A program made the position numbers and the translations under genes. Below the pieces are notes generated by a model, which saw only the letters and a list, made by a program, of their open reading frames with translations, did not search any database and had not been told where the DNA came from. From Macrostomum lignano (taxonomy: Eukaryota): 64,000 nucleotides of DNA. Position 1 is the stretch's first letter. The number at the start of each line of letters is the position of its first letter. Below are positions 3,187 through 64,000 of the stretch, one piece after another. The stretch lies in contig NIVC01001378.1 in NCBI GenBank assembly GCA_002269645.1, forward strand, positions 1 to 64,000. Reading direction: 5' to 3'.

Positions 3187-3237
<51 letters not shown>

Positions 3238-3293: not shown

Positions 3294-3328
<35 letters not shown>

Positions 3329-3374
3329 GTCTGTCTGTCGTCTGTCTGTCTGTCTGCCTGCCTGTCTGTCTGCC

Positions 3375-3423
<49 letters not shown>

Positions 3424-3434
3424 GCCTGCCTGCC

Positions 3435-3477
<43 letters not shown>

Positions 3478-3626
3478 TGTCTGTCTGTCTGTCTGCCTGC
3501 CTGCCTGCCTGTCTGTCTGTCTGTCTGTCTGACTGTCTGTCTGTCTGTCTGTCTGTCTGTGTCTGTCTGTCGTCTGCCTGTCTGTCTGTCTGTCTGTCTA
3601 TCTGTCTGTCTGTCTGCCTGCCTGCC

Positions 3627-3661
<35 letters not shown>

Positions 3662-3689
3662 TGTCTGTCTGTCTGTCTGCCTGCCTGCC

Positions 3690-3724
<35 letters not shown>

Positions 3725-3922
3725 TGTCTGTCTGTCTGTCTGCCTGCCTGCCTGCCTGTCTGTCTGTCTGTCTGACTGTCTGCCTGTCTGTTGTCTGTCT
3801 GTCTGCCTGCCTGCCTGTCTGTCTGTCTGTCTATCTGTCTGTCTGTCTGCCTGCCTGTCTGTCTGCCTGTCTGTCTGTTGTCTGTCTGTCTGTCTGCCTG
3901 CCTGCCTGTCTGTCTGTCTGAC

Positions 3923-3969
<47 letters not shown>

Positions 3970-3987
3970 GTCTGTCTGTCGTCTGCC

Positions 3988-4040
<53 letters not shown>

Positions 4041-4077
4041 TTTTGTCTGTCTGTCTGTCTGCCTGTCTGTCTGTCTG

Positions 4078-4127
<50 letters not shown>

Positions 4128-4173
4128 GCCTGCCTGTCTGTCTGTCTGTCGTCTGCCTGCCTGTCTGTCTGTA

Positions 4174-4256
<83 letters not shown>

Positions 4257-4291
4257 GTCTGTCTATCTGTCTGCCTGCCTGCCTGCCTGCC

Positions 4292-4352
<61 letters not shown>

Positions 4353-5599: not shown

Positions 5600-5643
<44 letters not shown>

Positions 5644-5662
5644 TAGTGTCTTAGTGTCTTAG

Positions 5663-5709
<47 letters not shown>

Positions 5710-5750
5710 CTGTCTGACTGTCTGTCTGTCTTAGTGTCTTAGTGTCTTAG

Positions 5751-5849
<99 letters not shown>

Positions 5850-5894
5850 TTGTCTGTCTGTCTGTCTGTCTATTTGTCTGTATGTCTGTCTTAG

Positions 5895-5991
<97 letters not shown>

Positions 5992-19300: not shown

Positions 19301-22300
19301 CACCCACTGAAGAATCAGAGCACCCAGTGAAGAATCAGAGCACCCACTGAAGGATCAGAGCACCCACTGAAGGATCAGAGCACCCACTGAAGGATCAGAG
19401 CACCCACTGAAGAATCAGAGCACTACCTGAAGAATCAGAGCACCCACTGAAGGATCAGAGCACCCACTGAAGAATCAGAGCACTACCTGAAGAATCAGAG
19501 CACCCACTGAAGAATCAGAGCACCCACTGAAGAATCAGAGCACCACCTGAAGAATCAGAGCACCCACTGAAGAATCAGAGCACCCACTGAAGAATCAGAG
19601 CACTACCTGAAGAATCAGAGCACCCACTGAAGAATCAGAGCACTACCTGAAGGATCAGAGCACCCACTGAAGGATCAGAGCACCCACTGAAGAATCAGAG
19701 CACCCACTGAAGGATCAGAGCACCCACTGAAGAATCAGAGCACCCACTGAAGAATCAGAGCACCCACTGAAGGATCAGAGCACCCACTGAAGGATCAGAG
19801 CACCTACTGAAGGATCAGAGCACCCACTGAAGGATCAGAGCACCTACTGAAGGATCAGAGCACCACCTGAAGGATCAGAGCACCCACTGAAGGATCAGAG
19901 CACCCACTGAAGAATCAGAGCACCACCTAAAGGATCAGAGCACCCACTGAAGAATCAGAGCACCCAGTGAAGAATCAGAGCACCCACTGAAGAATCAGAG
20001 CACCCAGTGAAGAATCAGAGCACCCACTGAAGGATCAGAGCACCCACTGAAGGATCAGAGCACCACCTGAAGGATCAGAGCACCCACTGAAGAATCAGAG
20101 CACCCACTGAAGAATCAGAGCACCCACTAAAGAATCAGAGCACCCACTGAAGGATCAGAGCACCCACTGAAGAATCAGAGCACCCACTGAAGAATCAGAG
20201 CACCCACTGAAGAATCAGAGCACCCAGTGAAGAATCAGAGCACCCACTGAAGGATCAGAGCACCACCTGAAGGATCAGAGCACCCACTGAAGGATCAGAG
20301 CACCCACTGAAGAATCAGAGCACCACCTGAAGGATCAGAGCACCCACTGAAGGATCAGAGCACCCACTGAAGAATCAGAGCACCCACTGAAGAATCAGAG
20401 CTTCCACTGAAGGATCAGAGCACCCACTGAAGAATCAGAGCACCCACTGAAGGATCAGAGCACCACCTGAAGAATCAGAGCACCCACTGAAGGATCAGAG
20501 CACCACCTGAAGAATCAGAGCACCTACTGAAGGATCAGAGCACTACCTGAAGAATCAGAGCACCTACTGAAGGATCAGAGCACTACCTGAAGAATCAGAG
20601 CACCCACTGAAGGATCAGAGCACCCACTGAAGAATCAGAGCACCCACTGAAGAATCAGAGCACCCACTGAAGAATCAGAGCACCCACTGAAGGATCAAAG
20701 CACCCACTGAAGAATCAGAGCACTACCTGAAGAATCAGAGCACCCACTGAAGAATCAGAGCACCCACTGAAGAATCAGAGCACCCACTGAAGAATCAGAG
20801 CACTACCTGAAGAATCAGAGCACCTACTGAAGGATCAGAGCACTACCTGAAGAATCAGAGCACCCACTGAAGAATCAGAGCACCCACTGAAGAATCAGAG
20901 CACCACCTGAAGAATCAGAGCACCCACTGAAGAATCAGAGCACCCACTGAAGGATCAGAGCACCCACTGAAGAATCAGAGCACTACCTGAAGAATCAGAG
21001 CACCCACTGAAGAATCAGAGCACCCACTGAAGAATCAGAGCACCCAGTGAAGAATCAGAGCACCCACTGAAGGATCAGAGCACCACCTGAAGAATCAGAG
21101 CACCCACTGAAGGATCAGAGCACCCACTGAAGAATCAGAGCACCCACTGAAGAATCAGAGCACCCACTGAAGAATCAGAGCACCCAGTGAAGAATCAGAG
21201 CACCCACTGAAGGATCAGAGCACCCACTGAAGGATCAGAGCACCCACTGAAGGATCAGAGCACCCACTGAAGAATCAGAGCACCCACTGAAGAATCAGAG
21301 CACCCACTGAAGAATCAGAGCACCCACTGAAGGATCAGAGCACCACCTGAAGAATCAGAGCACCCACTGAAGGATCAGAGCACCCACTGAAGAATCAGAG
21401 CACCCACTGAAGAATCAGAGCACCCACTGAAGAATCAGAGCACCCAGTGAAGAATCAGAGCACCCACTGAAGGATCAGAGCACCCACTGAAGGATCAGAG
21501 CACCACCTGAAGGATCAGAGCACCCACTGAAGAATCAGAGCACCCACTGAAGAATCAGAGCACCCACTGAAGAATCAGAGCACCCACTGAAGGATCAGAG
21601 CACCCACTGAAGAATCAGAGCACCCACTGAAGAATCAGAGCACCCATTGAAGAATCAGAGCACCCAGTGAAGAATCAGAGCACCCACTGAAGGATCAGAG
21701 CACCACCTGAAGGATCAGAGCACCCACTGAAGGATCAGAGCACCCACTGAAGAATCAGAGCACCACCTGAAGGATCAGAGCACCCACTGAAGGATCAGAG
21801 CACCCACTGAAGAATCAGAGCACCCACTGAAGAATCAGAGCTTCCACTGAAGGATCAGAGCACCCACTGAAGAATCAGAGCACCCACTGAAGGATCAGAG
21901 CACCACCTGAAGAATCAGAGCACCCACTGAAGGATCAGAGCACCACCTGAAGAATCAGAGCACCTACTGAAGGATCAGAGCACTATCTGAAGAATCAGAG
22001 CACCTACTGAAGGATCAGAGCACTACCTGAAGAATCAGAGCACCCACTGAAGGATCAGAGCACCCACTGAAGAATCAGAGCACCCACTGAAGGATCAGAG
22101 CACCCACTGAAGGATCAGAGCACCCACTAAAGAATCAGAGCACTACCTGAAGAATCAGAGCACCCACTGAAGAATCAGAGCACCCACTGAAGAATCAGAG
22201 CACCACCTGAAGAATCAGAGCACCCACTGAAGAATCAGAGCACCCACTGAAGGATCAGAGCACCCACTGAAGAATCAGAGCACTACCTGAAGAATCAGAG

Positions 22301-24596
22301 CACCCACTGAAGAATCAGAGCACCCACTGAAGAATCAGAGCACCCACTGAAGAATCAGAGCACCCAGTGAAGAATCAGAGCACCCACTGAAGGATCAGAG
22401 CACCACCTGAAGAATCAGAGCACCCACTGAAGGATCAGAGCACCCACTGAAGAATCAGAGCACCACCTGAAGGATCAGAGCACCCACTGAAGGATCAGAG
22501 CACCACCTGAAGAATCAGAGCACCCACTGAAGAATCAGAGCACTACCTGAAGAATCAGAGCACCCACTGAAGAATCAGAGCACCCACTGAAGGATCAGAG
22601 CACCACCTGAAGAATCAGAGCACCCACTGAAGGATCAGAGCACCACCTGAAGAATCAGAGCACCTACTGAAGGATCAGAGCACTACCTGAAGAATCAGAG
22701 CACCTACTGAAGGATCAGAGCACTACCTGAAGAATCAGAGCACCCACTGAAGGATCAGAGCACCCACTGAAGAATCAGAGCACCCACTGAAGGATCAGAG
22801 CACCCACTGAAGGATCAGAGCACCCACTGAAGAATCAGAGCACTACCTGAAGAATCAGAGCACCCACTGAAGAATCAGAGCACCCACTGAAGAATCAGAG
22901 CACCACCTGAAGAATCAGAGCACCCACTGAAGAATCAGAGCACCCACTGAAGGATCAGAGCACCCACTGAATAATCAGAGCACCCACTGAAGGATCAGAG
23001 CACCCACTGAAGGATCAGAGCACCCACTGAAGAATCAGAGCACTACCTGAAGAATCAGAGCACCCACTGAAGGATCAGAGCACCCACTGAAGAATCAGAG
23101 CACTACCTGAAGAATCAGAGCACCCACTGAAGGATCAGAGCACCCACTGAAGAATCAGAGCACTACCTGAAGAATCAGAGCACCCACTGAAGAATCAGAG
23201 CACCCACTGAAGAATCAGAGCACCACCTGAAGAATCAGAGCACCCACTGAAGAATCAGAGCACCCACTGAAGAATCAGAGCACCCACTGAAGAATCAGAG
23301 CACCCACTGAAGAATCAGAGCACCCACTGAAGGATCAGAGCTCCCACTGAAGGATCAGAGCACCCACTGAAGGATCAGAGCACCTACTGAAGAATCAGAG
23401 CACCCACTGAAGAATCAGAGCACCACCTGAAGAATCAGAGCACCCACTGAAGGATCAGAGCACCCACTGAAGGATCAGAGCACCCACTGAAGAATCAGAG
23501 CACCCACTGAAGGATCAGAGCACCCACTGAACATGTCCTGCATTGGTTTCTCGCCCACTCTCCCAGGGACGCCCATCTCGATGACTACGTCAACGAGATT
23601 CGAAACCTGACCCGGCCTCCCAGTCCATCGACAGCTGCTCGTCTCGCCCAGCTGCGCACGAGCCTGTTTGAGCTGCTCAAAGGAAGACAACTCAAACTGT
23701 GCCGCATTGAACGATCCGCACTGGTCCACATTGGCAGCACTAAAGAATACTTGAATACCCTGTTTCAGCCTATTGAATTGGCTAGGTGCTTCAGCACCGC
23801 CGCTGCACCTGACAGTGGGTAAGATTTATGATATTGTCTCATTTCTACAGAGATTATTCTGAATACAATATCAGATCTTATCTCCATCTTTATTCTGGGT
23901 GAGATTTAGGGAATAATCAGTCTAATATCTATAAGATTAGGGAATAATTAATCTAATCTCTATAGAGCAAAGCATTTAATTTTCTATTTCAGCCCTATCC
24001 TTGTCACCAACTCTCGCATCAACATAGCCAACGGCTTGGAAATCTCATCCAACGGAACCGGTTCCGCATTGGAATTCTGCGAAATCTCCGCTCGCTCCTG
24101 CCGCATCGGGTCGGGCTGCTTGTTGAGTCATTGCCGATGCCGCGAGCCGGAAGCTGAACTGGTCATCCCGGATGGCTGGGTGCTGCAGACCGTGCCGCTA
24201 CTAGCTGGAGCCGGCCAAGTCACGTGGGCCTGGCACTCGGACGACAATCCAAAGCAGCGAAGCTTAACCGAAGCCAAATTTCTTGGCAGACCGTTGGTGG
24301 AATTCTGTCATCGCCACGGCCTGCCAATGGACGAGGCGGAATGGTCTGGCAGTGGCAGCCTGTGGACTGCTAGACTGTTCCCCTGCGACAGGACTTGGAC
24401 TGCAGCGGTTGGCGGCCATGGACAAGGCGACCAGTCTTTGTTGACAACGCTTAAGTTGTTGAGATGGAGCGGCGAGTCTTGGAGACTGGTTGACTGGCTG
24501 GCTGAAAAGCCCGAAGAGAGAAGACTGATGAGCATGGCTGATATTGTCATGGAGAAGGACACCAAAGCTCTGATAGAGTTCAGGATGACTTTCTGA
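16323..24596 (+). CDS. FPGT: Fucose-1-phosphate guanylyltransferase (GDP-L-fucose pyrophosphorylase). Exons: 16323-16457, 16531-16791, 17708-18146, 23567-23818, 23993-24596. First coding exon not located
   Basis: Spliced protein has FDIIAICASD...YSDPPGPKIG|NGGALL, AGGMSQRSPWLSALGKLF, ACSD, ALAHP...TGHGV, LQKP, ELDAYGDLLRGLG, HIGSTKEYL, SLWTARLFP and MSMADIVMEKD, colinear with FPGT as I recall it. All four junctions are GT-AG and phase-consistent. Confidence 0.92.
16829..17648. repeat. 46-bp minisatellite, ~18 copies, in an FPGT intron
   Basis: Unit ACAATAAGCTTCAAGATATTGGTACAACAACCGATCAGGTCTCTGT. Confidence 0.96.
18178..18367 (-). mobile_element. tRNA-derived SINE, 3'-truncated copy of the family at 26890-27240
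   Basis: Closely similar to 27051-27240. The minus strand begins with a tRNA-like head carrying an A box (TAGCCCAGTGG) and a degenerate B box (GGCTTGATTCC). Confidence 0.8.
18432..23531. repeat. 20-bp satellite (CACCCACTGAAGRATCAGAG)n, ~255 copies, 5.1 kb, in an FPGT intron
   Basis: In exact register from 18461 to the end, with substitution variants only. Confidence 0.99.
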
Positions 24597-24628: not shown

Positions 24629-26456
24629 AGTGGATGTTAGAGAGACGCCACAGTGGGTGTTAGAGAAACGCCACATTGAGTGTTAGAGAGGCGCCACAGT
24701 GGGTGTTAGAGAGGTGCCACAGTGGTGTTAGAGAGGCGCCACAGTGGGTGTTAGAGAGGCTCCACAGTTAGTGTTATAGAGAGGCGCCACAGTGGGTGTT
24801 AGAGAGGCTCCACAGTTAGTGTTATAGAGAAGCGCCACAGTGGGTGTTAGAGAGGTGCCACAGTGGGTGTTAGAGAGGCGCCACAGTGGGTGTTAGAGAG
24901 GCGCCACAGTTAGTGTTATAGAGAGGCGCCACAGTGGGTGTTAGAGAGGCTCCACAGTTAGTGTTATAGAGAGGCGCCACAGTGGGTGTTAGAGAGGCTC
25001 CATAGTTAGTGTTATAGAGAGGCGCCACAGTGGGTGTTAGAGAGGCTCCACAGTTAGTGTTATAGAGAGGCGCCACAGTGGGTGTTAGAGAGGCTCCACA
25101 GTTAGTGTTATAGAGAGGCGCCACAGTGGGTGTTAGAGAGGCTCCATAGTTAGTGTTATAGAGAGACGCCACAGTGGGTGTTAGAGAAACGCCACATTGA
25201 GTGTTAGAGAGGCGCCACAGTGGGTGTTAGAGAGGTGCCACAGTGGGTGTTAGAGAGGCGCCACAGTGGGTGTTAGAGAGGCGCCACAGTTAGTGTTATA
25301 GAGAGGCGCCACAGTGGGTGTTAGAGAGGTGCCACAGTGGGTGTTAGAGAGGCGCCACAGTGGGTGTTAGAGAGGCTCCACAGTTAGTGTTATAGCGAGG
25401 CGCCACAGTGGGTGTTAGAGAGGCTCCACAGTTAGTGTTATAGAGAGGCGCCACAGTGGGTGTTAGAGAGGCTCCACAGTTAGTGTTATAGAGAGGCGCC
25501 ACAGTGGGTGTTAGAGAGGCTCCACAGTTAGTGTTATAGCGAGGCGCCACAGTGGGTGTTAGAGAGGCTCCACAGTTAGTGTTATAGAGAGGCGCCACAG
25601 TGGGTGTTAGAGAGGCTCCACAGTTAGTGTTATAGAGAGGCGCCACAGTGGGTGTTAGAGAGGTGCCACAGTGGGTGTTAGAGAGGCGCCACAGTGGGTG
25701 TTAGAGAGGCGCCACAGTTAGTGTTATAGAGAGGCGCCACAGTGGGTGTTAGAGAGGCTCCACAGTTAGTGTTATAGAGAGGCGCCACAGTGGGTGTTAG
25801 AGAGGCTCCATAGTTAGTGTTATAGAGAGGCGCCACAGTGGGTGTTAGAGAGGCTCCACAGTTAGTGTTATAGAGAGGCGCCACAGTGGGTGTTAGAGAG
25901 GTGCCACAGTGGGTGTTAGAGAGGCGCCACAGTGGGTGCTAGAGAGGCGCCACAGTTAGTGTTATAGAGAGGCGCCACAGTGGGTGTTAGAGAGGCTCCA
26001 TAGTTAGTGTTATAGAGAGACGCCACAGTGGGTGTTAGAGAAACGCCACATTGAGTGTTAGAGAGGCGCCACAGTGGGTGTTAGAGAGGTGCCACAGTGG
26101 TGTTAGAGAGGCGCCACAGTGGGTGTTAGAGAGGCTCCACAGTTAGTGTTATAGAGAGGCGCCACAGTGGGTGTTAGAGAGGTGCCACAGTGGGTGTTAG
26201 AGAGGCGCCACAGTGGGTGTTAGAGAGGCGCCACAGTTAGTGTTATAGAGAGGCGCCACAGTGGGTGTTAGAGAGGCTCCATAGTTAGTGTTATAGAGAG
26301 GCGCCACAGTGGGTGTTAGAGAGGCTCCATAGTTAGTGTTATAGAGAGGCGCCACAGTGGGTGTTAGAGAGGCTCCATAGTTAGTGTTATAGAGAGACGC
26401 CTCTATAATATAGAGAGCTGGCGCCATAGTGGATGTTAGACGGACGCCACAGTGAG
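24629..26456. repeat. Composite 23/25-bp minisatellite (48-bp higher-order unit) immediately 3' of FPGT
   Basis: Units TAGAGAGGCGCCACAGTGGGTGT (23 bp) and TAGAGAGGCTCCACAGTTAGTGTTA (25 bp) mostly alternate. Confidence 0.96.
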
Positions 26457-46482: not shown

Positions 46483-47938
46483 TCAAATGCAGTCTAGATG
46501 GTCCATCAGCAACAGCAATTTAGACAAAAATTGCATATGTGTCTAGTAGTTATTTCGAAAACTGCTCTCACTCTCGAATGGCTCAGTGCCGGCAGTGTCC
46601 AAGAACATCTTCACGTTCACCCGGCCGTTGGGCCTCCATTCGGCAGCTCGGATGCCCATGCTGGCGCAGCCAGTGGTGCCGCAGGTCCTGCACCTTCCAG
46701 CCTTGAAGTCCTCGTAGCTGGCACAGGGATAGGCCTGCAGGCATTTTTGAATAATAATAGAATTGACTCATTTCACCACGTAACGATAGTCATGTTTTGA
46801 TAAATCATCCGCATCCATCTGCTAAACTAGTAATCAACACACGACACCACTCTAAACAAAAGAATGGCAAACTCACCACATAATTGCGTCGCGGATTGGC
46901 AATGGTGCTGATCATCATTGCACGAACGCGATTGTGACTGCAGGTCATGCGCCAGACTGTGCCGCCGATGATGCCGCTGACACTATCGCTCGGTGGTTCG
47001 TTGCAGTTCGGCTGCGATTTGCCACCGTTCGGGTAGAAGTCCACGTGTCCCACCGGCTGCATCAGACCGAACCCGCCCGAAAGTTTGATGATGCTCAACG
47101 TGCTGTCTCCGTCGGTGTGGATCGCGTCAACGAACCGAGCATCAGTTGGATCGAGTCGAACCTCCGGGTGAGTGTACTCAAAGTAGGGTCCGGCGGGGTC
47201 CATTCCTGTGATGCGGCCCAGCTTCTTGCTTCCAGTGCTCAACCGTTCGCCTGCGTAGCCGGAAACGTGAGCACCTAGGCTGTGGCCGATGAGGTGGAAG
47301 TTCTCCCGGTTGGCGCCAAAGTTCGACTCCAGCCAGACGATGAACTGGGCGACGAGGGCACCGACGACACGAATGTTCGCAGTGGCCTGCGGTTTGGTTG
47401 GGTTCTTTGAATTCTTCTGGGTTGCAACTAAAGTCAGCTGCCGCTTTGAACATTATAGTTTATACCCTACAGCCAGGCAATTAGGTGAGTCAATTTTATA
47501 ACAACTCACCAACGTGTAAGGATAGCCGTTGCCCTGACTCCAGTCCAGCTGGATGACGTTGTAGTCGCCTGCGTTCAACAGAGCAACCTTCATCGCCTTG
47601 TTCCAATCGGAGTTTCCGTTGTCCGTGAAGCCGTGAATGATGATCTTAGTTGGTGCGCTTGACCTGAAGTTGGACTTGCTCACGCTGTCCCTGTTGTTGT
47701 AGACCAGGTTCTGAGCAGTGTTGACGTTGCGCCTGGTGTACAGGGCAAAGGTCGGCCGAATTCTGTCGGGATCCTGCGGCAGTACCTGAATAGGTCGGTT
47801 GACGGAGTCATAGAAGTTCCCTCGGGTGCTGAAGCAGCCCAGTCCATCGTAGCAGACTTCTCTGAAGGTGCTCTCCTCACTAGAGTAGATTGAGGAGACG
47901 CAGAGGCCCAGAAGCAGCAGCAGAATGCTCTGTCGCAT
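46483..47938 (-). CDS. Pancreatic-lipase-like triacylglycerol lipase, copy B, intact and without a PLAT domain. Exons: 47938-47510, 47386-46877, 46734-46572, probable terminal exon 46493-46483
   Basis: Catalytic triad motifs GHSLG, DPAGP and CSH, plus signal peptide MRQSILLLLLGLCVSS. Junctions are GT-AG and phase-consistent. Confidence 0.9.
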
Positions 47939-48719
47939 ATTGTTGTCTAATTGCACAAATGCACCGCTATGTAGAGCTATAGAGCTAAATTGTACCGTAC
48001 CGTAAGAATTCGAACTGTAAAGATTTACACAATAATGTGAGGATAATTTATAGAAAAAAACTTTAATGGCGCGTGTAACCACCTTGCAGCTTTCCCATGG
48101 CAAGTTGTTATCCCAGAACAGCGCCTGGAATCAATTAGTGACGCACTCAAGTGATAAACCTGTTAAATATGGTCTGTGTGTTACAAAAATAGCGTAATAA
48201 ATAAAGGCGCAGTTTGAACTGAGATTATCATTACCGGTTTTTTGTGAGAAAACTGACAAATGTCGTTACGAGAAAATGGGGTGATCGATGCAATTGTTTT
48301 TCTCAAATTAGGGTACAATCTACACATGCAGTACTTTTTAGACACACACCTTCATTTGTACTGCATGAATTCAATGTGTGTAGCTTCGAGATGCCAGTTC
48401 ACTAACTCAATATTTGAAACAAAGCTATTTAATTTTGTTACCATAGGTGCAACTTTTTGTATCACTGTCTTCTGCAAGCATTTAGCACTCGTATATCCAT
48501 ATAGTTGCATGTTATCGTAATTTCTACCATTATGGGATTTTATGGGAGCGCTAAATTGTTTAGTTATGCATTTTCAGGACCTTTTATTTTCCTCTACTCA
48601 ATGCGAGATTTAGATGCACATGCTAGAGAACTACTAAAGTCGCAACCGGGTGCACTATGGCCATCCGTTGAAGTTGCTGACAGCCCGTCAGGATGATAAC
48701 TGAATGCTTAGGGGCTATA

Positions 48720-49699: not shown

Positions 49700-52286
49700 A
49701 ACCAAAATGCGCACAGCAACAGCTCAGAATTGCTACATGGAACTGCCGAACATTGCGAGCAAAGTGGAGACAACATCTTTTGGCCCAGCTTGAAGGCGAC
49801 CTACAACTTGATATGCCTGGGCTTCACCAGGAGCACCTATAGGCGGCGGCTGGCTCCTGCAATACACATCAGCAGACTCGAAAGGTCGGGGAGGAATTGG
49901 CGTTCTAGCTCGTAACAGGGCCGAGGCTTCAGAAAAGTACACGCTGTGAGAGCCTGTCGCCGCGGCTTCTGCGCTTCGACATTCGACTCCGCAAGCGTAA
50001 CATGCGGCTCTTCTGTGCCTATGCGCCCACGGCTGCGCACCCAGAGGAGCACAGGAGTTCTGGAGTTCCTGTCAGCACAGCTGGAGAAGACCGCTCAACG
50101 CGAAACTGTACTGGAGATCTCAACGCCGTCATGCAAAGATCCGAGCGCGCCCGCTTTGTAACGCCACGCGAAAACAACAACACTAATGCCCTAGTGGATT
50201 TCATGGACCGCCACGACCTGGTCTCAGCAAAGAAGCTGTTCAGGAAGCCGCTTCACAGATTGGCAGCATTTGCTGGCTTTAAACGGCCAGGTCGGAAAGC
50301 GTGAGGAAAATTTGCTACGAAGATACTCGCACAGCTCGACCACGTGCTGCTTCGCCAGCGAGAACGACGACAAGTGACCAACTGCGATACAGTGGCCCCG
50401 TTGGCAGTGCAGTCAGACCATAGGCTGCTCTACTGCAACCTGCGCCTGAGGGACCCGCCATATCGACCACCGAAAAAACAGCCAAAGCGCTACTCCAGGA
50501 GATCACGGACGCCGGTCCCGACAATAAACCGCGTGCCGTCTGGTCGGTCGTCAATCGGCTGACAGGCCGCAAGAGACGCAAGGCTCTGAGCCATGTGGGT
50601 GACACGCCCGAAGAGAGGCGAAACGAGCTGCGGGCCTTATTCTCTGGTATCGTCGACGCGCCCCCTCCGCCGCAAAGGGACAATATATCATTGCCCACGG
50701 AGGTTGAGCTGCCAGAGGAGAGCTCCTTTAACGTCAGCCCCATCACCATCGACGAGGTGCTCCAACTTGCAAAGAAGACGCCTGGCAACAAGGCTACTGG
50801 ACCAGACGACGTGCCTGTCGAGGTGCTGCGAATCCCGCAGGTCATGTTGGAAGTCATGCGAGTGATGAAATACGTGCTAGCTGGGGGCCCCACCTGGGGG
50901 ACTGCGCATATCGTCGGGATCCCAAAGAAACCAGATTCCGTCAAGGTCGAAGAACATCGCGGGATTTCGCTAATGTCCTGCACAGCTAAGCTATTTAACA
51001 GAGTTCTGCTGTCGCGGCTGCAGCCGGTGCTGGACCCGTTCCTCCGGCGCGAGCAAAACGGATTCCGGCCAGGCAGAGGCACCGTGACCCAAATTCTCGC
51101 TCTGCGTCGAATTCTAGAAGAGGCCAGCATCCACCAGTCGAACATCATCTGCATCTTCGTAGACTTACTGAAGACCTTTGACTCGGTGTCGAGGCGGGTA
51201 ATCGCCAACATCCTGCGCGCGTATCACGTACCCGAGCAGCTGGTGATGGCTGTGTTAGCTCTGTACCAGGAGAGTAGGGCGGCAGTTGTGACGGTCGGAA
51301 GCCTTTCCGACTTCTTCGACACGTCTTCCGGCGTTCTCCAAGGGGACACCTTGGCTCCATTTCAGTTCGTCCTGGTCTTGGACTGGGTACTGCGTACTGG
51401 CCTCCCTGACGACTCCAAAGGATTCTTGCTCCGCCGCGGAACAAGCAGGCGACCACCCTGAGAAGTGGCTCTCCGTCCTAGCCTACGCAGACGACCTAGC
51501 GCTGCAGTCTAGTACAGCTGAAGGAGCTCAACTCCTGCTGGACCAGCTGACAGCGGCGGCCGCTGCGATCGGACTGTCCGTGAACACCAAAAAGACAATG
51601 GTGCTGACCGTGCCGACGGACCTCCCAGCTGAGATCTACTGCCGCTGCACGAACGGGCAGGTGGCGTTGCTGCCCCACTGCAAAGAGTTCGTCTACCTCG
51701 GCGGTCTTGTGCCAAGCATCACGGATGACATGGCACAGCGCAGGGCGCTTGCCTGGGGCGCATTAATTCCGCACCATGCGGACTGTCCTGCAGTGCCCCG
51801 CGCTGCCGGATCGGCTGAGAGGGCGGCTGTTCGATCAGGTCGTCATAGAAACCATACTACTTAACAATGCTGAAACGTGGACACTGACCGGCCCGCAGGA
51901 GCGGCAACTCCTGAAAGCCGCCTTCGGTGTCCTGCACTACTCGCCGATCCGCCACCACCAAACATCAGCAATGACGAGCAGCACTGACGACCCAGTCTCC
52001 TGCTGCAAATCCGGCGCCTACAGCTGGTTGGCCACGCTATCCGGGCAGAGCAGTAGTGCCCTGAGCCGCTTCAGGACGTGCTGCTGCTATACAATGTATA
52101 TAACTTCAAGGGCCGCGGCGGCTTGGTCAGACGAGGAGTCTGCGTTTCGTCGACCTGCTTCTAAAAGACGCTGAAATCTCTGACTCTCGCGGACTCGCTA
52201 TTTTGCGTAAATCTGCGCTTGCGCGCGCCTTTTGACAGCAACCCAACTTGGCTTGCCCAGGGTTGTTGTAATTTGTTGTTGTTGTT
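49700..52286 (+). mobile_element. Near full-length RTE-clade LINE (APE endonuclease + RT) with frameshifts and stops. The 5' end may extend to ~49330
   Basis: EN motifs LRIATWNCRTL, AYAPT, GDLNA, LDHVL and SDHRLL. RT motifs ATGPDDVP, HRGISL, EQNGFR, FVD...FDSV, GVLQGDTLAP, YADDL and FVYLGG. (TTG)n tail at ~52262-52286. Confidence 0.92.
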
Positions 52287-56596: not shown

Positions 56597-57550
56597 ATGT
56601 CTTCAGGAGGCACTAGAACTGGCTCCAAACGAAAGTCTTCATCAATGGCAGCGTCAGATGCCGGAGATGACTCAGCATCGAATGCTTCATCAACAAACAC
56701 GGCCAATGTGCCGTCGCAGCATCACAAGCTTCGGCATCATCACCATGGCCAGCAATCGTCTGGCTCAGTAGGCAATCAGCAGCAATCGAACTGGGATTGC
56801 AGTGTCTGCACCTATAGCAATCCGGCCGAGTCGTTCAAATGCATGATCTGCGACACTAGGAAAGGCACATCGACAAGGAAGCCGAGGTTAAATCCGCAGG
56901 TAGTGGAGATGCAGGAGATGATCCAGAGCGCCATTCTCCGAGGCGGAGGCAGTGCCGGAGCCGGGGCTCCCGGTGGCGCCGGTGATCACGGCGGTGACGC
57001 CGAGTCCGACCAGAGCGGCAGTCAGTCTCTGCCTCGACTCTCCTCCGGCGGCGCCAAGCACCCAACTAGCGGCGGTGGCGGCGGCGCCTTTCGTAAGGGC
57101 TCCGGCGCTGTCAGTCTAGGCGGCGCGCGCAATCATCATCATCACCAGAAGCTGCCCAGATTAAGAAATGTTGACAGATCAACAGCCAGGCACATTCCCG
57201 TCACTGCTAACGGAGTGACAGTTATTATTACGGATTTTAAACCGAAAACAAGTGTGGCATCGGCTGTTGCCAAATCGAAGCGATCTGTTGCAATGGAATC
57301 TTCTTCTAATGCAGCAGCTACAGGTGATCATGCGGACGATTCTTCTACATCGATTGCTTCGCCTCCGATGCCGAATTCGCTTTTGACTTCGACGAATTTG
57401 CCGCCACCGTCGCTTACTAACGAAGATGTACATTCGGCTTCTGGCGCACCCGCCCCAGCGGTCTCGTCTGGCATGCTGGATGAGGAGACAGATTCCATTG
57501 ACAGACGGTCGGAATCGCCGCCACAGATATCGCCGCAAAAATTTGATTGA
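56597..57550 (+). CDS. RYBP: RYBP/YAF2 homolog (RING1- and YY1-binding protein, non-canonical PRC1), single exon, 317 aa
   Basis: RanBP2-type Zn finger [32 protein letters not shown] and the C-terminal motif [31 protein letters not shown]. Confidence 0.93.
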
Positions 57551-59283: not shown

Positions 59284-60370
59284 TGTATCTCCAATCATAC
59301 CTCAGCCATGGCTAAGTAAGCATCTCCATTCAAACCTCAGCCATGGCTAAGTAAGCATCTCCAATCAAACCTCAGCCATGGCTAAGTAAGCATCTCCAAT
59401 CAAACCTCAGCCATGGCTAAGTAAGCATCTCCAATCAAACCTCAGCCATGGCTAAGCAAGCATCTCCAATCAAACCTCAGCCATGGCTAAGTAAGCATCT
59501 CCAATCAAACCTCAGCCATGGCTAAGTAAGCATCTCCAATCAAACCTCAGCCATGGCTAAGTAAGCATCTCCAATCAAACCTCAGCCATGGCTAAGTAAG
59601 CATCTCCAATCAAACCTCAGCCATGGCTAAGTAAGCATCTCCAATCAAACCTCTCTCAGAGCCATGGCTAAGCAAGCATCTCCAATCAAACCTCTCACAG
59701 AGCCATGGCTAAGCAAGCATCTCCAATCAAACCTCTCTCAGAGCCATGGCTAAGCAAGCATCTCCAATCAAACCTCTCTCAGAGCCATGGCTAAGCAAGC
59801 ATCTCCAACCAAACCTCTCACAGAGCCATGGCTAAGTAAGCATCTCCAATCAAACCTCTCTCAGAGCCATGGCTAAGCAAGCATCTCCAATCAAACCTCT
59901 CACAGAGCCATGGCTAAGTAAGCATCTCCAATCAAACCTCAGCCATGGCTAAGTAAGCATCTCCAATCAAACCTCTCACAGAGCCATGGCTAAGTAAGCA
60001 TCTCCAATCAAACCTCTCACAGAGCCATGGCTAAGTAAGCATCTCCAATCATACCTCAGCCATGGCTAAGTAAGCATCTCCAATCAAACCTCTCTCAGAG
60101 CCATGGCTAAGTAAGCATCTCCAATCATACCTCAGCCATGGCTAAGCAAGCATCTCCAATCAAACCTCTCACAGAGCCATGGCTAAGTAAGCATCTCCAA
60201 TCAAACCTCTCACAGAGCCATGGCTAAGTAAGCATCTCCAATCAAACCTCTCACAGAGCCATGGCTAAGCAAGCATCTCCAATCCTACCTCAGCCATGGC
60301 TAAGCAAGCATCTCCAATCAAACCTCTCACAGAGCCATGGCTAAGTAAGCATCTCCAATCAAACCTCTCA
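59284..60370. repeat. 35/41-bp minisatellite, ~28 copies
   Basis: Unit AAGCATCTCCAATCAAACCTCAGCCATGGCTAAGT. A +6-nt variant dominates the right half. Confidence 0.96.
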
Positions 60371-60676
60371 CTAAACCTTTAACAAATTAAAGTTAAATAA
60401 AAGGAGTATGCAGTATTTTTGTATTTGTTTGATTTTAGGCCAGTGAGTAAAAAGCGCGATCTGCAGTGGGTTCGTACAGGAATAGGGCTAAGGGTAGTTT
60501 TTTATTGTAGAATAAAATATTAAACTGAAATACTTCGGGTGTGTCATAAGTAATGTCACTGCAGGCCTCTGTCTAAAATATGTAGGCACATGGACTTGTG
60601 GGTAGTGTAGCTGCAAAGTATACTTAGTGAAGCAATAGCAGTGCATTTGAGACGTGCATAGGTTGTTTATGGCCCA

Positions 60677-63600
60677 CACAGGTAGGAGGAATTCAAGTTA
60701 AATGCAAAAAAATTGCCCATAATCGGTTTTTTGCTCATGGGATAGAATTTGTACTCCTGATTCTAAAATGACCTCCCATGAAATCCTAACTGATTGGGTT
60801 CGCGAGAAATGCTCATAATTAAGTTTTTACCATAGATATGAGGCAGTCCAACAAGCAAAGCTCGCCATTCAAGGATAAGTTGAATGTATTTTGTCCAAAA
60901 CAGCTCTCACCACTGTGAATTCAATTTGTAGTGTGCAATAGTTCAGGCACTATTTCAAAATATATATATTAATTTAAAACAGTGAATCAGCAAATTAATA
61001 ATTATTATCATTATTTACCTATAGAATTTTTAAGATAATGGCTAATCTTTCTAAGTCTAAACCAAAACAGAAAACTGTAATGCAATAGATATTGAGCTGT
61101 AAATTCAAATAGATTGTCATTGAGCATTTTTAGTTTTACAAGCAATTACAAATGACAGCTATTATATTGTACCGTAGCCTGTAGAAGCTGTTGTCCCATC
61201 GCTGGGTCACCACTCCGGCGCTTAAAGTTTTGCCATACTTTACTGAAATCATGGTGAGCACTTTCACCAGCCTGCTCAGAAAATGTGCCCAGGCCTTTGC
61301 CATGCAGTCTGCAAAACTCGACCACATGGACGAACACGCAGTGAACTTTTGGTGTCACTCTAATAGGTAGCTTGCAGTAGGACTCTCGAAACTGCTGAAT
61401 CAGCTGTTCATATTCAGGCTGTAGCTTCTCCCCAAAGCAAGCGTGTACCACTTCACGGAAGCATCGAAGGGCTTCACCAAACTGCTTCAGCTGCTCAGGC
61501 AGGATGCTCGTCAGTTCATCAGCTAGTTGCAGGATTGCGTGGCACTGGTTGCCCTCGAATGATCCTCCGCGATAGTCAGCGCGCCCGATGTTATGGCTTG
61601 CAGCCCAGCTGAGTACATGACCTCCGTCAGCTTCAAGCGAGTCGACGATCTTGTTAACAACTCCAATGAGAAGATGCAGTTCAGGTGGGGGCAGCTTGTT
61701 GAGTATCGGCTCATCTTCTCCACCAGACAAAAGGGGTTTGTTAACACAGCTTTTAAAAAGCTTGGCCGATCGCAACTCATTGCCTGCTTCGGAAAAGGCA
61801 GCTGCATTCTTTGTTACACTGCCAAATGTGCGCGTCAGACCATCCGCAGCGAATGGAGCCTTTGCCTCGCACCATGTACATGGGTACATTGCCGCGTGAT
61901 TCTGCAAGCCAATCACTATGTTGGCAAGCTTGAGATCACAAGCAACAGTAAACGAAATCGCCTGTAGATTCAGAGAGTCCAGTAGTAGTTTTACGTTGAG
62001 ATAAGTCTCACTAACATCAGGAGCAATAGCGATGATCATTAATTTTTTAACACCAGAGTTGAGAAACTGGCGGCTGCAGGCTAACTTCTTTACTGGCGAT
62101 GCTGCAGGCTCAGACTCACCGGTCACAGTCAGCACAACTTTCAGAGAGCCTCCTCCACCATCAATTCCAATCTTGACAAAGCTGTTCTCGATGCCACGCT
62201 CGGTGCAAATATGATTTAGCAAACCTTGAAGATCGGAGCAGATCACGGCTGGCCTTGGTCCCGAAACCTCCTGAGTCTGTCCAGATGAACGTATGAATGG
62301 CAGCTGAACAAACGTGAAGAAGCTTGTTAGGCAGCGGCCTCTCTTCTGCAGCTCTTCACGAAGGTTAGGCTCGATCACATGCCGGCCTGCACCTAACCTA
62401 AGAATTCTGGCCAGCTTTAGAGTCTGCTTGCTGCTTAAACTAAGGCCGACTTTCAAAGCCGAAATTGTTTCGTGGCTTATATATCCTTTCCTAGAAACAC
62501 TTGTTATAGGTTCAGCGGCTGAGCTAGAAGCTACCTTGACTCGAAGAGGTTTACCAGCAGTTTGACTTAGTACAATACCACCTGCTGCAGTCTCATTACA
62601 CTCCTTGATGACTGAGCTAGCCAGCTGGTGCTTGGTAAGAGGAGATATTTTGTCTCGCAAATTCTTTAATTTGGTTGTTTTATTGCAGCGATGCTCCAGG
62701 CCGGGTCCGATCCGTGACATGCAATGCGAGCAGAGTTTTTGAATCGCAGTAGCCTCTGCCACAGCAGGACGACCTCGGCCTGCTGGTGGACCTGTGGCCA
62801 AGTATTTGGTGTCTGGCACTGCACTGCTGCTCCTGTGTGAGCTGGCCAAGCTACACAGCTCACAGTTGCAGTCAGGGTTGCCACGAGTTGAAGGCGGCAG
62901 AGACTGAAGGTCGGTAACTATCTGGTCATACGCCAGTAGGACTGGAATAGGTCGCGAATCTGGGCAGGACAAAGACGAAAGCTTCCTTCTGCAGCCGTCA
63001 CATATGCCAGATGGAAGATATTGTCTTTCTACCTTGAAGCCTTCGTACACTGTAGATTGAATTAGTTCAATCTGATGCTCCGTCAAAGGGCGATGCGCTC
63101 TTCGAAGACACATGGCACACAGTGCCTGGAGATTTTCTTCGTGGTTTCTTTTCTTTGGCATTGTAGATGATGATGAGTAAAAACAAGAAAATTGTTTGGA
63201 CAGTTGATCAATTGAAACAAAATATTCTAAAATGCTCTAAATACTCATTTACATCACCATAAATTGAGCAACTGCTCATGATTTAGGTATAAAGGGATCG
63301 ATAAAAAATAATGTGCAAATCGTGTGAGTGTGATCACAAGCAAAATTTTGCCTTTTGCCGTTTAATGGTGGCGGGTTGAATGTACATATTTTTATCGATT
63401 ATACGTCAGGTGATTTTTTTGCATATTTCATGATCGTGGTGGTAAATAGACTTAGAAAACTGTACAATACTTGTTATCTTCTCTAATTTAGAGAATCAAA
63501 CTTATTTATATAGAAGAGGCCAATTCTTTACGCTAAGAATGTACAGCATAGCATCAGTTGTAACATCGCACACTTAACAAAGTTGCCTTGAGTTTTTTGT

Positions 63601-63900
63601 TTTGTTTTACCCTACAAAAAGGATGATTAAACATACATGCACTCAATACAAATTGAATTCACAGTGGTGAGAACTGTTTTGGACAAAATACATTCAACTT
63701 ATCGTTGAATGGCAAGTTTTGCTTGTTGGACTGCCTCTTATCTATGGTAAAAACTTAATTATGAGCATATCTTGCGAACCCAATCAGTTAGGATTTCATG
63801 GGAGGTCATTTTAGAATCAGGGGTACAAATTCTATCCCATGAGCAAAAAACCGATTATGGGCAATTTTTTTGCATTTAACTTGAATTCCTCCTACCTGTG
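60677..63900 (-). mobile_element. Complete Chapaev-type (CMC/Transib-related) DNA transposon, 3224 bp
   Basis: Ends CACAGGTAGG...CCTACCTGTG. TIRs 60677-60930 and 63647-63900 differ at about 8 positions by eye. A 4-bp TSD CCCA sits at 60673-76 and 63901-04. Confidence 0.9.
61146..63161 (-). CDS. Intact 671-aa Chapaev-type transposase with RAG1-like motifs
   Basis: N-terminal H-X7-C-X2-C (HEENLQALCAMC), CDGC and CNCELC Zn ligands. Core motifs KIGIDGG, CDLKL, YPCTWCE, PELHLLIG, PKVHCVFVH and SEQAGESAHHDF. No stop or frameshift. Confidence 0.92.
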   Translation of the reverse strand: MPKKRNHEENLQALCAMCLRRAHRPLTEHQIELIQSTVYEGFKVERQYLPSGICDGCRRKLSSLSCPDSRPIPVLLAYDQIVTDLQSLPPSTRGNPDCNCELCSLASSHRSSSAVPDTKYLATGPPAGRGRPAVAEATAIQKLCSHCMSRIGPGLEHRCNKTTKLKNLRDKISPLTKHQLASSVIKECNETAAGGIVLSQTAGKPLRVKVASSSAAEPITSVSRKGYISHETISALKVGLSLSSKQTLKLARILRLGAGRHVIEPNLREELQKRGRCLTSFFTFVQLPFIRSSGQTQEVSGPRPAVICSDLQGLLNHICTERGIENSFVKIGIDGGGGSLKVVLTVTGESEPAASPVKKLACSRQFLNSGVKKLMIIAIAPDVSETYLNVKLLLDSLNLQAISFTVACDLKLANIVIGLQNHAAMYPCTWCEAKAPFAADGLTRTFGSVTKNAAAFSEAGNELRSAKLFKSCVNKPLLSGGEDEPILNKLPPPELHLLIGVVNKIVDSLEADGGHVLSWAASHNIGRADYRGGSFEGNQCHAILQLADELTSILPEQLKQFGEALRCFREVVHACFGEKLQPEYEQLIQQFRESYCKLPIRVTPKVHCVFVHVVEFCRLHGKGLGTFSEQAGESAHHDFSKVWQNFKRRSGDPAMGQQLLQATVQYNSCHL

Positions 63901-64000
63901 CCCAAGCTATCGCAAGAATACGCCAAGCAGATTTAGCAAGTGCAACGCGATGAAAAATCATCTATGCAGTGAACAAAAATCACCATGAATCTCGACATGA

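What the first reader, a model, noticed from the sequence alone, without database searches (positions are those of the whole stretch)
60677..63900. Apparently intact, potentially active Chapaev-type transposon with a RAG1-like transposase
Seen directly: CAC...GTG termini, ~254-bp TIRs that are identical over the outer ~80 bp, a perfect 4-bp TSD (CCCA) and an unbroken 671-codon ORF. Established: CAC/GTG ends, 3-4-bp TSDs and an N-terminal 'Chapa' Zn finger shared with the RAG1 N-terminus define Chapaev elements. Motif parallels with RAG1, recalled from memory: HEENLQALCAMC vs HQANLRHLCRIC, DLKL vs DEKL (D708), YPCTWC vs YICTLC, ELHLLIG vs ALHCDIG, VHCVFVH vs FHKTLAH and AGES vs GNES (E962). The ends begin CACAGGT (RSS heptamer is CACAGTG) followed 20 nt later by GCAAAAAAA, symmetrically on both sides, and there is no room for a RAG2-like gene. 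The superfamily is known. The value lies in a seemingly functional, RAG2-independent relative for studying RAG origins or as a transgenesis tool.
Basis: partly seen in the sequence, partly recalled or inferred. Interest (0 to 1): 0.85.

Follow-up and report, generated by a model that had tools for sequence, protein, structure and literature searches.

The report
Intact Chapaev transposon with RAG1-like transposase
This is a complete, young copy of a Chapaev-group cut-and-paste DNA transposon in the flatworm Macrostomum lignano; its single gene encodes an enzyme predicted to fold like RAG1, the enzyme that rearranges vertebrate antibody genes, which makes it a useful new member of a known family and not a new kind of element.

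Summary
Window 60677-63900 is a 3224-bp element with 257-nt terminal inverted repeats (TIRs; 96% complementary, outer 78 nt identical), CAC...GTG tips, a perfect CCCA target-site duplication (TSD) and an unbroken 671-codon ORF on the minus strand.

The host is Macrostomum lignano. A second copy at another locus is 99.3% identical, has a different 4-bp TSD (GTAT) and is frameshifted. A sister family (42% aa identity) has five near-identical copies, four of them with perfect 4-bp TSDs.

- **Fold:** all 32 significant PDB matches of the AlphaFold model are RAG1 or HzTransib (best E 5e-12).
- **Catalytic residues:** profile alignment maps D409, C428/C431, H496, H607/H612 and E633 onto RAG1 D708, C727/C730, H795, H937/H942 and E962.
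- **Family:** the family is closer to a published Chapaev3 transposase (E 6e-14). Its N-terminus matches published Chapa domains, best Chapaev-2_HM.

TIR nt 30-38 read AAAAAAATT, 22 nt after the heptamer. This copies the published Transib/RSS23 layout and recurs in four diverged families.

Current activity is plausible but untested. It is a new member of a known kind, of moderate interest.

The parts
60673..60676 (.). Left target-site duplication, CCCA
   Evidence: Read directly; identical to 63901-63904.
60677..60933 (+). TIR arm on the 3' side of the transposase gene (257 nt)
   Evidence: 96% complementary to 63644-63900, outer 78 nt identical. Relative to the L001 copy, positions 60860 and 60904 are private changes of this copy.
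60677..60683 (+). Heptamer-like tip CACAGGT (the RSS heptamer is CACAGTG, the Transib consensus CACAATG)
   Evidence: CAC is the only part shared by all six related families; in L010 one arm reads CCC.
60706..60719 (+). Subterminal block AAAAAAATTGCCCA (TIR nt 30-43); nt 30-38 AAAAAAATT occupy the place of the Transib/RSS23 nonamer, 22 nt after the heptamer
   Evidence: it is the best positionally conserved block across six families (score 46; shuffles mean 36, max 44; 0 of 2000 reach it). Transib consensus CACAATG-N23-AAAAAAATC from PMC1131882.
61146..63161 (-). Transposase ORF, 671 aa, one exon, intact
   Evidence: It aligns end to end with homologues of 657-707 aa.
62853..63143 (-). N-terminal Chapa-type zinc-finger domain (aa 7-103); family-invariant ligands H7, C15, C18, C54, C57, C98, C100, C103
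   Evidence: The profile matches published Chapa domains: Chapaev-2_HM 54 bits, -1_AA 37, -1_HM 32, -5_HM 26. AF2 pLDDT is about 85-96.
62766..62780 (-). GRGRP, an AT-hook-like motif (aa 128-132) in a disordered linker; GRP is conserved in most homologues
   Evidence: The L001 copy has R131H. A role in binding the A-tract is inference only.
62685..62732 (-). CCHC zinc knuckle (C144, C147, H157, C159), invariant in the family
61263..62162 (-). Catalytic core from D334 to E633: D334 (GIDGGGG), D409 (CDLKL), C428/C431 (C(2)C), H496 (LH), H607/H612 (H(4)H), E633 (GES)
   Evidence: hhalign to RAG1 gives D409=D708, C428/C431=C727/C730, H496=H795, H607/H612=H937/H942 and E633=E962. D334 aligns to the first D of Garfield_BM. 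Fold match to RAG1/HzTransib.
63644..63900 (-). TIR arm on the 5' side of the transposase gene (257 nt); tip 63894-63900 and A-tract block 63858-63871
63901..63904 (.). Right target-site duplication, CCCA

Best explanation
Window 60677-63900 is an autonomous cut-and-paste DNA transposon of the Chapaev group, in Macrostomum lignano. Some authors file Chapaev under the CMC superfamily and others under Transib.

Its single intron-less gene encodes a 671-aa transposase with four parts:
- an N-terminal two-zinc Chapa finger (aa 7-103);
- a disordered linker carrying a GRGRP AT-hook-like motif;
- a CCHC knuckle;
- a catalytic core of about 500 aa that is predicted to fold like the RAG1/Transib core, including the C2 and H2 zinc ligands and the D334/D409/E633 triad.

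Inferred mechanism. A transposase dimer binds each 257-nt TIR at two places: the CAC tip, which sits in the active site, and the A-tract/TTGCCCA block about 22 nt further in, which acts like a nonamer. By analogy with RAG1 and HzTransib, it nicks at the tip and forms a hairpin on the flanking DNA, releasing the element. It then inserts the 3'-OH ends 4 bp apart in the target, which produces the 4-bp duplication. No RAG2-like partner is encoded.

What is shown and what is inferred. Shown: the anatomy, the family assignment, the fold and motif homology, and recent mobility of the family. Inferred: the nick-hairpin chemistry, the role of the A-tract and the GRP motif, and present-day activity of this copy (my estimate about 0.5).
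For: Anatomy.

Host and second copy: P0001 from M. lignano is 99% identical. Copy L001:4262-7483 is 99.3% identical over 3224 nt, sits in different flanks, has TSD GTAT and carries a 1-bp deletion at codon 604.

TSDs in relatives: the sister family (L002-L006) has five copies 99.7-99.97% identical, with TSDs ATCT, TTGC, AACC and CTCG, plus one imperfect pair, TATA/AATA. Four more families have CAC tips. L010 and L011 have perfect 4-bp TSDs (TATA, TACA); L008 and L009 have one-mismatch pairs, CATG/GATG and TGCC/TGCT.

Fold: the AF2 model has pLDDT 83. All 32 Foldseek PDB hits with E<=1e-3 are RAG1 (27; best 4wwx_E at 5.4e-12 over about 565 columns) or HzTransib (5; 6pqx_A at 3.5e-7, TM 0.58). 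The next hit has E 0.03.

Sequence: hhalign to the verified mouse RAG1 core gives E 8.8e-5 over 227 columns, with every catalytic and zinc residue from D708 onward in register. The best PDB profile hit is amphioxus RAG1L at the C(2)C motif, E 0.69. hhalign to Chapaev3 Garfield_BM gives probability 98.2% and E 6e-14 over 346 columns.

State of this copy: at the four strongly conserved columns where the two copies differ (R24, R131, R260, Y666), the window copy keeps the family consensus.

TIR block: conservation. It matches the Transib TIR consensus CACAATG-N23-AAAAAAATC (PMC1131882).
Against: - No functional data exist: no transcript evidence, no empty or polymorphic site, and no excision footprint could be examined with these tools.
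- Only two copies of this family were found, and one is frameshifted.
- Differences between the two copies are 10 non-synonymous to 4 synonymous. That is neutral drift, so nothing shows selection on this copy.
- Sequence similarity to RAG1 is modest (hhalign probability 59.8%) and covers only aa 407-641. The N-terminal half of the core (aa 120-420) gave no signal against RAG1 389-720, so the D334=D600 equivalence rests on the fold match and on the Garfield alignment.
- TM-scores are moderate (0.43-0.58). AF2 may partly remember RAG1 from its training set.
- Pfam finds nothing.
- The Chapaev reference sequences came from machine-read supplement PDFs and contain reading errors.
- The A-tract block is clear in four of the six families. 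It is absent or shifted in L008 and L011.
Confidence: 0.85

Rival explanations
1. It is a member of the canonical Transib lineage, or of a new Transib sub-lineage, that happens to make 4-bp duplications; it is not a Chapaev element.
For: The only significant fold matches are RAG1 and HzTransib. The TIR layout (CAC heptamer, about 22-nt spacer, AAAAAAATT) copies the published Transib consensus. A 2026 preprint reports Transib relatives with 3-bp TSDs, so TSD length alone does not decide the matter.
Against: - Canonical Transib transposases have no N-terminal Chapa/NZD domain (PMC4411706; preprint). This protein has one that matches published Chapaev Chapa domains at 26-54 bits.
- The profile similarity to a Chapaev3 transposase (E 6e-14, 346 columns) is far stronger than to RAG1 (E 8.8e-5).
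- Eight of eleven related elements show perfect 4-bp TSDs and the other three show 3 of 4 matching; none shows 5 bp.
- Kapitonov and Koonin treat Chapaev as a clade inside the Transib superfamily, so part of this rivalry is only a matter of naming.
Confidence: 0.07
2. It is a structurally intact but no longer mobile copy. It may be silenced by the host (for example through piRNAs) or carry an inactivating missense change, and its ORF is unbroken only because the copy is young.
For: Only two copies were seen and the other is already frameshifted. Differences between the copies look neutral (10 non-synonymous to 4 synonymous). This copy has two private changes in the inner part of one TIR. No expression or polymorphism data are available.
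Against: All family-invariant residues are present, including the DDE triad and every zinc ligand. At the conserved columns where the copies differ, this copy keeps the consensus. The outer 78 nt of both TIRs are identical. The 0.7% divergence between copies indicates very recent transposition of the family.
Confidence: 0.4
3. It is a domesticated host gene derived from a transposase, or the two copies arose by segmental duplication or an assembly artefact and not by transposition.
For: M. lignano has a duplicated, repeat-rich genome (tandem arrays throughout the window).
Against: Homology between the two loci starts and stops exactly at the CAC and GTG tips. The flanks are unrelated and each copy has its own 4-bp direct repeat, CCCA versus GTAT. 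Long TIRs are retained. The sister family shows five further independent insertion sites.
Confidence: 0.02

Closest known systems
Chapaev transposons (Repbase Chapaev-1/2/5_HM of Hydra and Chapaev-1_AA of Aedes; filed as CMC-Chapaev by RepeatMasker and as a clade of the Transib superfamily by Kapitonov and Koonin 2015)
   Same: CAC...GTG tips, 4-bp TSD, one transposase of about 650-700 aa, an N-terminal Chapa zinc finger with the pattern H-x7-C-x2-C ... C-x2-C ... C-x-C-x2-C, and the C(2)C, LH and H(4)H motifs with a DDE triad.
   Different: It is a new host (a flatworm) and a new family. Only N-terminal fragments of the Repbase proteins could be compared, so identity over the catalytic core is unknown. 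The TIRs are long (257 nt).
Chapaev3 elements (for example Garfield_BM of Bombyx mori, PMC4079192)
   Same: Homologous core over 346 columns at E 6e-14, with the same order of motifs.
   Different: Chapaev3 makes 3-bp TWA duplications and carries a different type of N-terminal finger (C-x..-C-x2-C ... H-x..C). Its proteins are shorter (556 aa).
Transib transposons (HzTransib, PDB 6pqn/6pqr/6pqx/6pqy)
   Same: Same predicted core fold (E 3.5e-7, TM 0.58). No RAG2-like partner. A TIR with a CAC heptamer, a spacer of about 22-23 nt and an A-rich nonamer-like block.
   Different: Transib makes 5-bp TSDs and lacks the Chapa domain. No sequence-level hit to HzTransib was obtained in the two PDB sequence searches made with this protein and its family profile.
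RAG1 / RAG1L (vertebrate V(D)J recombinase; amphioxus ProtoRAG, PDB 6b40)
   Same: Best fold match (E 5.4e-12 over about 565 columns). D708, E962, C727/C730, H795 and H937/H942 are in register. The N-terminal finger is related to the RAG1 NZD (published alignment; PMRAG1L 22 bits).
   Different: No RAG2-like gene. No RING finger was detected. The TSD is 4 bp, not 5 bp. The two ends are symmetric, so nothing suggests a 12/23 rule. About 14% sequence identity.

Membership tests
Chapaev | TIRs with invariable 5'-CAC ... GTG-3' termini (PMC4079192) | tested here: met
   Window tips are CACAGGT and ACCTGTG. The same holds in L001, the sister family and L008, L009 and L011; in L010 one arm is mutated to CCC.
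Chapaev | Target-site duplication of 3-4 bp (4 bp for Chapaev proper) | tested here: met
   CCCA (window) and GTAT (L001); ATCT, TTGC, AACC and CTCG (sister family); TATA (L010) and TACA (L011). Three further elements have a one-mismatch 4-bp pair.
Chapaev | DDE catalytic triad | tested here: met
   D409 and E633 align to RAG1 D708 and E962. D334 aligns to the first D of Garfield_BM and is invariant in the family. The D334=D600 equivalence is inferred from the fold match only.
Chapaev | Conserved C(2)C, LH and H(4)H motifs (Yuan and Wessler 2011, as cited in PMC4079192) | tested here: met
   C428-x2-C431, L495-H496 and H607-x4-H612.
Chapaev | N-terminal Chapa zinc-finger domain | tested here: met
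   The profile of aa 1-112 against published Chapa fragments gives Chapaev-2_HM 54 bits, -1_AA 37, -1_HM 32 and -5_HM 26. Eight invariant ligands are present. The fold search of the isolated domain was inconclusive: best hit a ZAD domain at E 2.5.
Chapaev | Phylogenetic placement of the full transposase among Repbase Chapaev families | not testable with these tools
   No Repbase or RepeatPeps library is available. There is only indirect ranking: Chapaev3 E 6e-14 versus RAG1 E 8.8e-5.
Transib (canonical) | 5-bp target-site duplication (PMC1131882) | tested here: not met
   4 bp in all eleven elements examined, three of them with one mismatch.
Transib (canonical) | Transposase with no domain other than the RAG1-like core (PMC4411706) | tested here: not met
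   A Chapa domain and a CCHC knuckle are present.
Transib (canonical) | RAG1-core-like fold | tested here: met
   Foldseek hits to 6pqx_A at E 3.5e-7 and to RAG1 at 5.4e-12.
Transib (canonical) | TIR made of a CAC heptamer, a spacer of about 23 nt and an A-rich nonamer | tested here: met
   CACAGGT-N22-AAAAAAATT in the window. Sister family N23-AAAAAAATG, L010 N23-AAAAATTGC, L009 N25-AAAAATCTC. Not seen in L008 or L011.
RAG1/RAG1L (ProtoRAG, TransibSU) | Adjacent RAG2-like gene inside the element | tested here: not met
   There is no second ORF outside the transposase ORF; the spacers are 212 bp and 482 bp.
RAG1/RAG1L (ProtoRAG, TransibSU) | RING finger after the N-terminal zinc domain (RAG1, RAG1L) | tested here: not met
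   No Pfam hit at E<=10 apart from a chance zinc-ribbon match. Only a 16-residue CCHC knuckle is present.
CACTA/EnSpm and Mirage (other CMC groups) | CACTA termini with 3-bp (EnSpm) or 2-bp (Mirage) TSD; EnSpm-type transposase domains | tested here: not met
   The tips read CACAGGT, the TSD is 4 bp, and there is no Pfam transposase hit.

The most novel reading that the evidence does not exclude
Chapaev ends use the same two-part signal as Transib TIRs and V(D)J recombination signals: a CAC heptamer, a spacer of about 22-25 nt and an A-rich nonamer-like block (here AAAAAAATTGCCCA). That signal is read by a RAG1-core-like enzyme whose GRP AT-hook and CCHC module stands in for the RAG1 nonamer-binding domain. 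If so, heptamer-spacer-nonamer recognition predates the Chapaev/Transib/RAG split. The window copy, together with its more prolific sister family, would then be a live, RAG2-independent third branch on which that recognition can be tested in a transgenesis-capable animal.
Probability: 0.3. Interest if true: 0.65.

Novelty: new member of a known kind. Interest (0 to 1): 0.42.

Why it matters
Chapaev is the least studied branch of the RAG1/Transib family. In the literature searched, no Chapaev element has been assayed or solved, and a 2026 preprint states that experimental validation in Chapaev systems is lacking.

This locus supplies a complete, apparently undamaged element with defined ends, a defined TSD, a confident full-length model and mapped catalytic and zinc residues. 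The host, M. lignano, is a flatworm in which stable transgenesis is available (PMC8717057). That makes several questions testable:
- whether Chapaev uses nick-hairpin chemistry;
- whether the Chapa finger, a relative of the RAG1 N-terminal zinc domain, has a role in transposition;
- whether the RSS-like two-part end is functional.

It could also serve as a native transgenesis vector. Conversely, it could be a source of instability in M. lignano lines.

Tried and rejected
- Pfam scan of the transposase: no family, only a chance zinc-ribbon match at E 3.4.
- Single-sequence search against PDB sequences: nothing relevant.
- Profile search against PDB sequences: only a sub-threshold RAG1L hit at E 0.69. 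I used it as a lead, not as proof.
- hhalign of the N-terminal half of the core (aa 120-420) against RAG1 389-720: no signal, E 0.51. Neither the D334=D600 equivalence nor any NBD equivalence is shown at sequence level.
- Fold search of the isolated N-terminal 200 aa (pLDDT 84.7): no significant match. The best hit is a ZAD domain at E 2.5. This agrees with the preprint's statements that the NZD fold has no solved homologue and that one of its zinc modules resembles a ZAD, but it proves nothing.
- Exact look-up of the window's own protein: not on record, so copy number could not be extended that way.
- TIR searches in L007 and L012: none found, probably because the contigs are truncated or the copies degraded.
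- Search for further copies or solo TIRs in the window: none.
- Rejected ideas: a domesticated gene, a segmental duplication, and a CACTA or hAT assignment. The reasons are given under the rival explanations and the membership test.
Full report
**Observation.**
- The arms 60677-60933 and 63644-63900 form a 257-nt inverted repeat at 96% complementarity. In a direct alignment they are identical over the outer 78 nt and differ at nine inner positions.
- The element begins CACAGGT and ends ACCTGTG. It is flanked by CCCA at 60673-60676 and again at 63901-63904.
- The minus-strand ORF 61146-63161 is 671 codons from ATG to stop.
- All other ORFs of 80 aa or more lie inside that ORF in other frames. 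The two non-coding stretches are 212 bp and 482 bp, so there is no room for a second gene.
- A 29-nt probe of the tip matches only the two ends of the element in 64 kb, against zero expected. A BLAST of the whole element against the window finds no other copy.

**Host and other copies.**
- The nearest database protein (P0001, 99% identity) is a hypothetical protein of Macrostomum lignano.
- Its locus, L001 on contig NIVC01000136.1, holds a second copy of the element at L001:4262-7483. It differs by 21 substitutions and two 1-bp indels over 3224 nt, which is 99.3% identity. The flanks are unrelated and it has its own 4-bp duplication, GTAT.
- That copy lies inside the span of a MIF4G-domain gene on the opposite strand. 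It carries a 1-bp deletion at codon 604 that shifts the frame.
- Seven of the nine mismatches between the TIR arms are shared by both copies, so they belong to the family and are not decay. Two (60860 and 60904) are private to the window copy.
- Within the ORF the copies differ at 10 non-synonymous and 4 synonymous sites, the pattern expected of neutral drift after insertion. At the four strongly conserved columns among these (R24, R131, R260, Y666) the window copy keeps the family consensus.
- A sister family in the same genome (P0003, 42% aa identity) has five copies that all encode the identical 680-aa protein. They are 3457 bp long, 99.7-99.97% identical, and have 226-nt TIRs starting CACGGTT. 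Their TSDs are ATCT, TTGC, AACC and CTCG, plus one imperfect pair, TATA/AATA.

**Breadth of the family.** A profile of 28 homologues finds 10,132 clusters at E<=1e-3 and 1,611 at E<=1e-30 among 1.84 billion representative proteins. Named members come from insects, Pseudolycoriella and Psylliodes. This is therefore a large and widespread transposase family. Four further families for which ends could be recovered also start with CAC:
- L008: CACGGTG, TSD CATG/GATG.
- L009: CACACTG, TSD TGCC/TGCT.
- L010: CACGGTT on one arm (the other mutated to CCC), TSD TATA.
- L011: CACTATT, TSD TACA.

In all, eight of eleven elements have perfect 4-bp duplications and three have one mismatch. None fits 5 bp.

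**What the protein is.**
- Pfam finds nothing, and a single-sequence search of PDB sequences finds nothing relevant.
- A profile search of PDB sequences puts amphioxus RAG1L (6b40) first, though not significantly (E 0.69), exactly at the GL..S.Y.CT.CE motif.
- An AlphaFold2 model built on the 28-sequence alignment has mean pLDDT 83. In a Foldseek search of the PDB, all 32 hits with E<=1e-3 are RAG1 (27; best 4wwx_E at 5.4e-12 over about 565 columns) or HzTransib (5; best 6pqx_A at 3.5e-7, target TM 0.58). The next hit is at E 0.03.
- Profile alignment of the family to that sequence gives E 8.8e-5 (probability 59.8%) over 227 columns. It puts D409 on D708, C428/C431 on C727/C730, H496 on H795, H607/H612 on H937/H942 and E633 on E962.
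- The N-terminal half of the core gave no sequence signal against RAG1. The equivalence of D334 (GIDGGGG) with D600 (SCDGMGD) therefore rests on the fold match and on the alignment below.

**Why Chapaev.** The published hallmarks are a 3-4-bp TSD, invariable CAC...GTG termini, a DDE triad and the C(2)C, LH and H(4)H motifs (PMC4079192). All are present.
- The family profile aligns to the Chapaev3 transposase Garfield_BM, read from that paper's supplement, with probability 98.2% and E 6e-14 over 346 columns, including the first aspartate. That is far better than the alignment to RAG1.
- The N-terminus carries eight invariant zinc ligands: H7, C15, C18, C54, C57, C98, C100 and C103.
- A profile of aa 1-112 was scored against the Chapa-domain fragments printed in Additional file 5 of Kapitonov and Koonin 2015, used as machine-read. 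The scores are Chapaev-2_HM 54 bits, Chapaev-1_AA 37, Chapaev-1_HM 32, Chapaev-5_HM 26, a sea-star RAG1L 22, amphioxus Chapaev-1/2 at 16 and 12, and human RAG1 4.
- The element therefore belongs with the Hydra/Aedes type of Chapaev.
- A separate model of aa 1-200 (pLDDT 84.7) has no significant PDB fold match; the best is a ZAD domain at E 2.5. This is in line with a 2026 preprint, which found no solved homologue for the RAG1 NZD fold, a resemblance of one of its zinc modules to a ZAD, and NZD-like Chapa domains in Chapaev transposases.
- Whether Chapaev is filed under CMC or under the Transib superfamily differs between authors.

**The ends.** A more telling reading is that TIR nt 30-38 are AAAAAAATT, 22 nt after the heptamer. 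That is the published Transib TIR consensus layout, CACAATG-N23-AAAAAAATC, which itself mirrors RSS23 (PMC1131882).
- The same layout appears in families whose transposases are only 34-42% identical to this one. The sister family has N23-AAAAAAATG, L010 has N23-AAAAATTGC and L009 has N25-AAAAATCTC.
- Across the six families, the best positionally conserved 14-mer beyond the heptamer is AAAAAAATTGCCCA at nt 30-43. Its score is 46, against a shuffle mean of 36 and maximum of 44; none of 2000 shuffles reaches it.
- L008 and L011 do not show the block at that position.
- Both ends of one element are identical here, so nothing suggests a 12/23-type asymmetry.
- On the protein side, a GRP motif resembling an AT-hook (GRGRP, aa 128-132) is conserved in most homologues. 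It lies in a disordered linker just before an invariant CCHC knuckle. That it reads the A-tract, as the GGRPR start of the RAG1 nonamer-binding domain does, is my inference and is untested.

**Mechanism and its status.**
- Shown: the anatomy, the family, the fold and motif homology, 4-bp staggered integration, and recent mobility of this family and its sister.
- Inferred from RAG1/HzTransib: dimeric binding of the heptamer tip and the subterminal block, nicking, hairpin formation on the flank, and independence from any RAG2-like partner.
- Unknown: whether this copy is active now. I put that at about one half.

**Comparison and novelty.** The Chapaev superfamily, its Chapa domain and its link to RAG1 are published. 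A RAG2-independent relative of RAG1, HzTransib, is already characterised structurally. I found no description of Chapaev elements in M. lignano in the searchable literature and no functional work on any Chapaev element.

The finding is a new member of a known kind. It has practical value as an intact candidate for the first functional study of this branch. It also offers a modestly novel lead in the RSS23-like layout of the ends, but I could not check whether the original Repbase Reports already note that layout.

**Caveats.**
- The TM-scores are moderate.
- AF2 was trained on RAG1 structures.
- The Chapaev reference sequences came from machine-read PDFs with reading errors.
- Copy number, empty sites and expression could not be examined, because no M. 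lignano genome or transcriptome is searchable with these tools.

Noticed in passing
L002-L006 (M. lignano contigs NIVC01000157, 566, 1036, 2395 and 40), element at 3417-6873 of each locus: A sister Chapaev family: 3457 bp, 226-nt TIRs starting CACGGTT, and five copies 99.7-99.97% identical that all encode the same 680-aa protein. It looks more prolific, and possibly more active, than the family in the window.
   Followed up: partly
L001:4262-7483: The second copy of the window's family lies within the span of a MIF4G-domain gene on the opposite strand, presumably in an intron. It is inactivated by a 1-bp deletion at codon 604, and P0001 is the resulting frameshifted gene model.
   Followed up: yes
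L008:4001-25560 (Pseudolycoriella hygida CM055406.1): The protein annotated 'Protein doublesex' (P0029, 756 aa, DM domain) is a chimeric gene model. Its first 580 or so residues are a Chapaev transposase from an element with about 210-220-nt TIRs (roughly L008:3565-6556), fused to downstream DM-domain exons.
   Followed up: partly
window 59304-60369: A 41/117-nt satellite array (about 28 copies, 92% matches) ends roughly 300 bp before the transposon. The element sits next to tandem-repeat DNA.
   Followed up: no
window 2137-38084 (many arrays): The window is unusually rich in tandem repeats: (TCTG)n at 3017-4372, a 5-kb array of a 20/40-nt unit at 18454-23531, a 23/48-nt array at 24629-26401, and 46-nt and 58-nt arrays at 16831-17648 and 30814-31712.
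   Followed up: no
window 50595-51461 (+): An ORF with a reverse-transcriptase domain (RVT_1, E 1.6e-19), probably a retrotransposon remnant.
   Followed up: no
window 6031-6570 (-), 24036-24596 (+), 47453-48103 (-), 56597-57550 (+): Exon-like ORFs of host genes: Sec23/24 trunk domain, fucose pyrophosphorylase, lipase, and a RYBP/YAF2-like protein (RanBP zinc ribbon plus YAF2_RYBP motif).
   Followed up: no
P0134 (representative search): A 3919-aa protein carries a segment at residues 2822-3311 that matches this transposase (E 7e-147). It is either a fusion or domestication, or another chimeric gene model.
   Followed up: no
window 60741-60746 and 63831-63836 (TIR nt 65-70); the same offset in L002, L009 and L011: A second short block, GATAG(A/T), recurs at about nt 65-70 of the TIR in several families. 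It may be another binding element; its significance was not tested.
   Followed up: no
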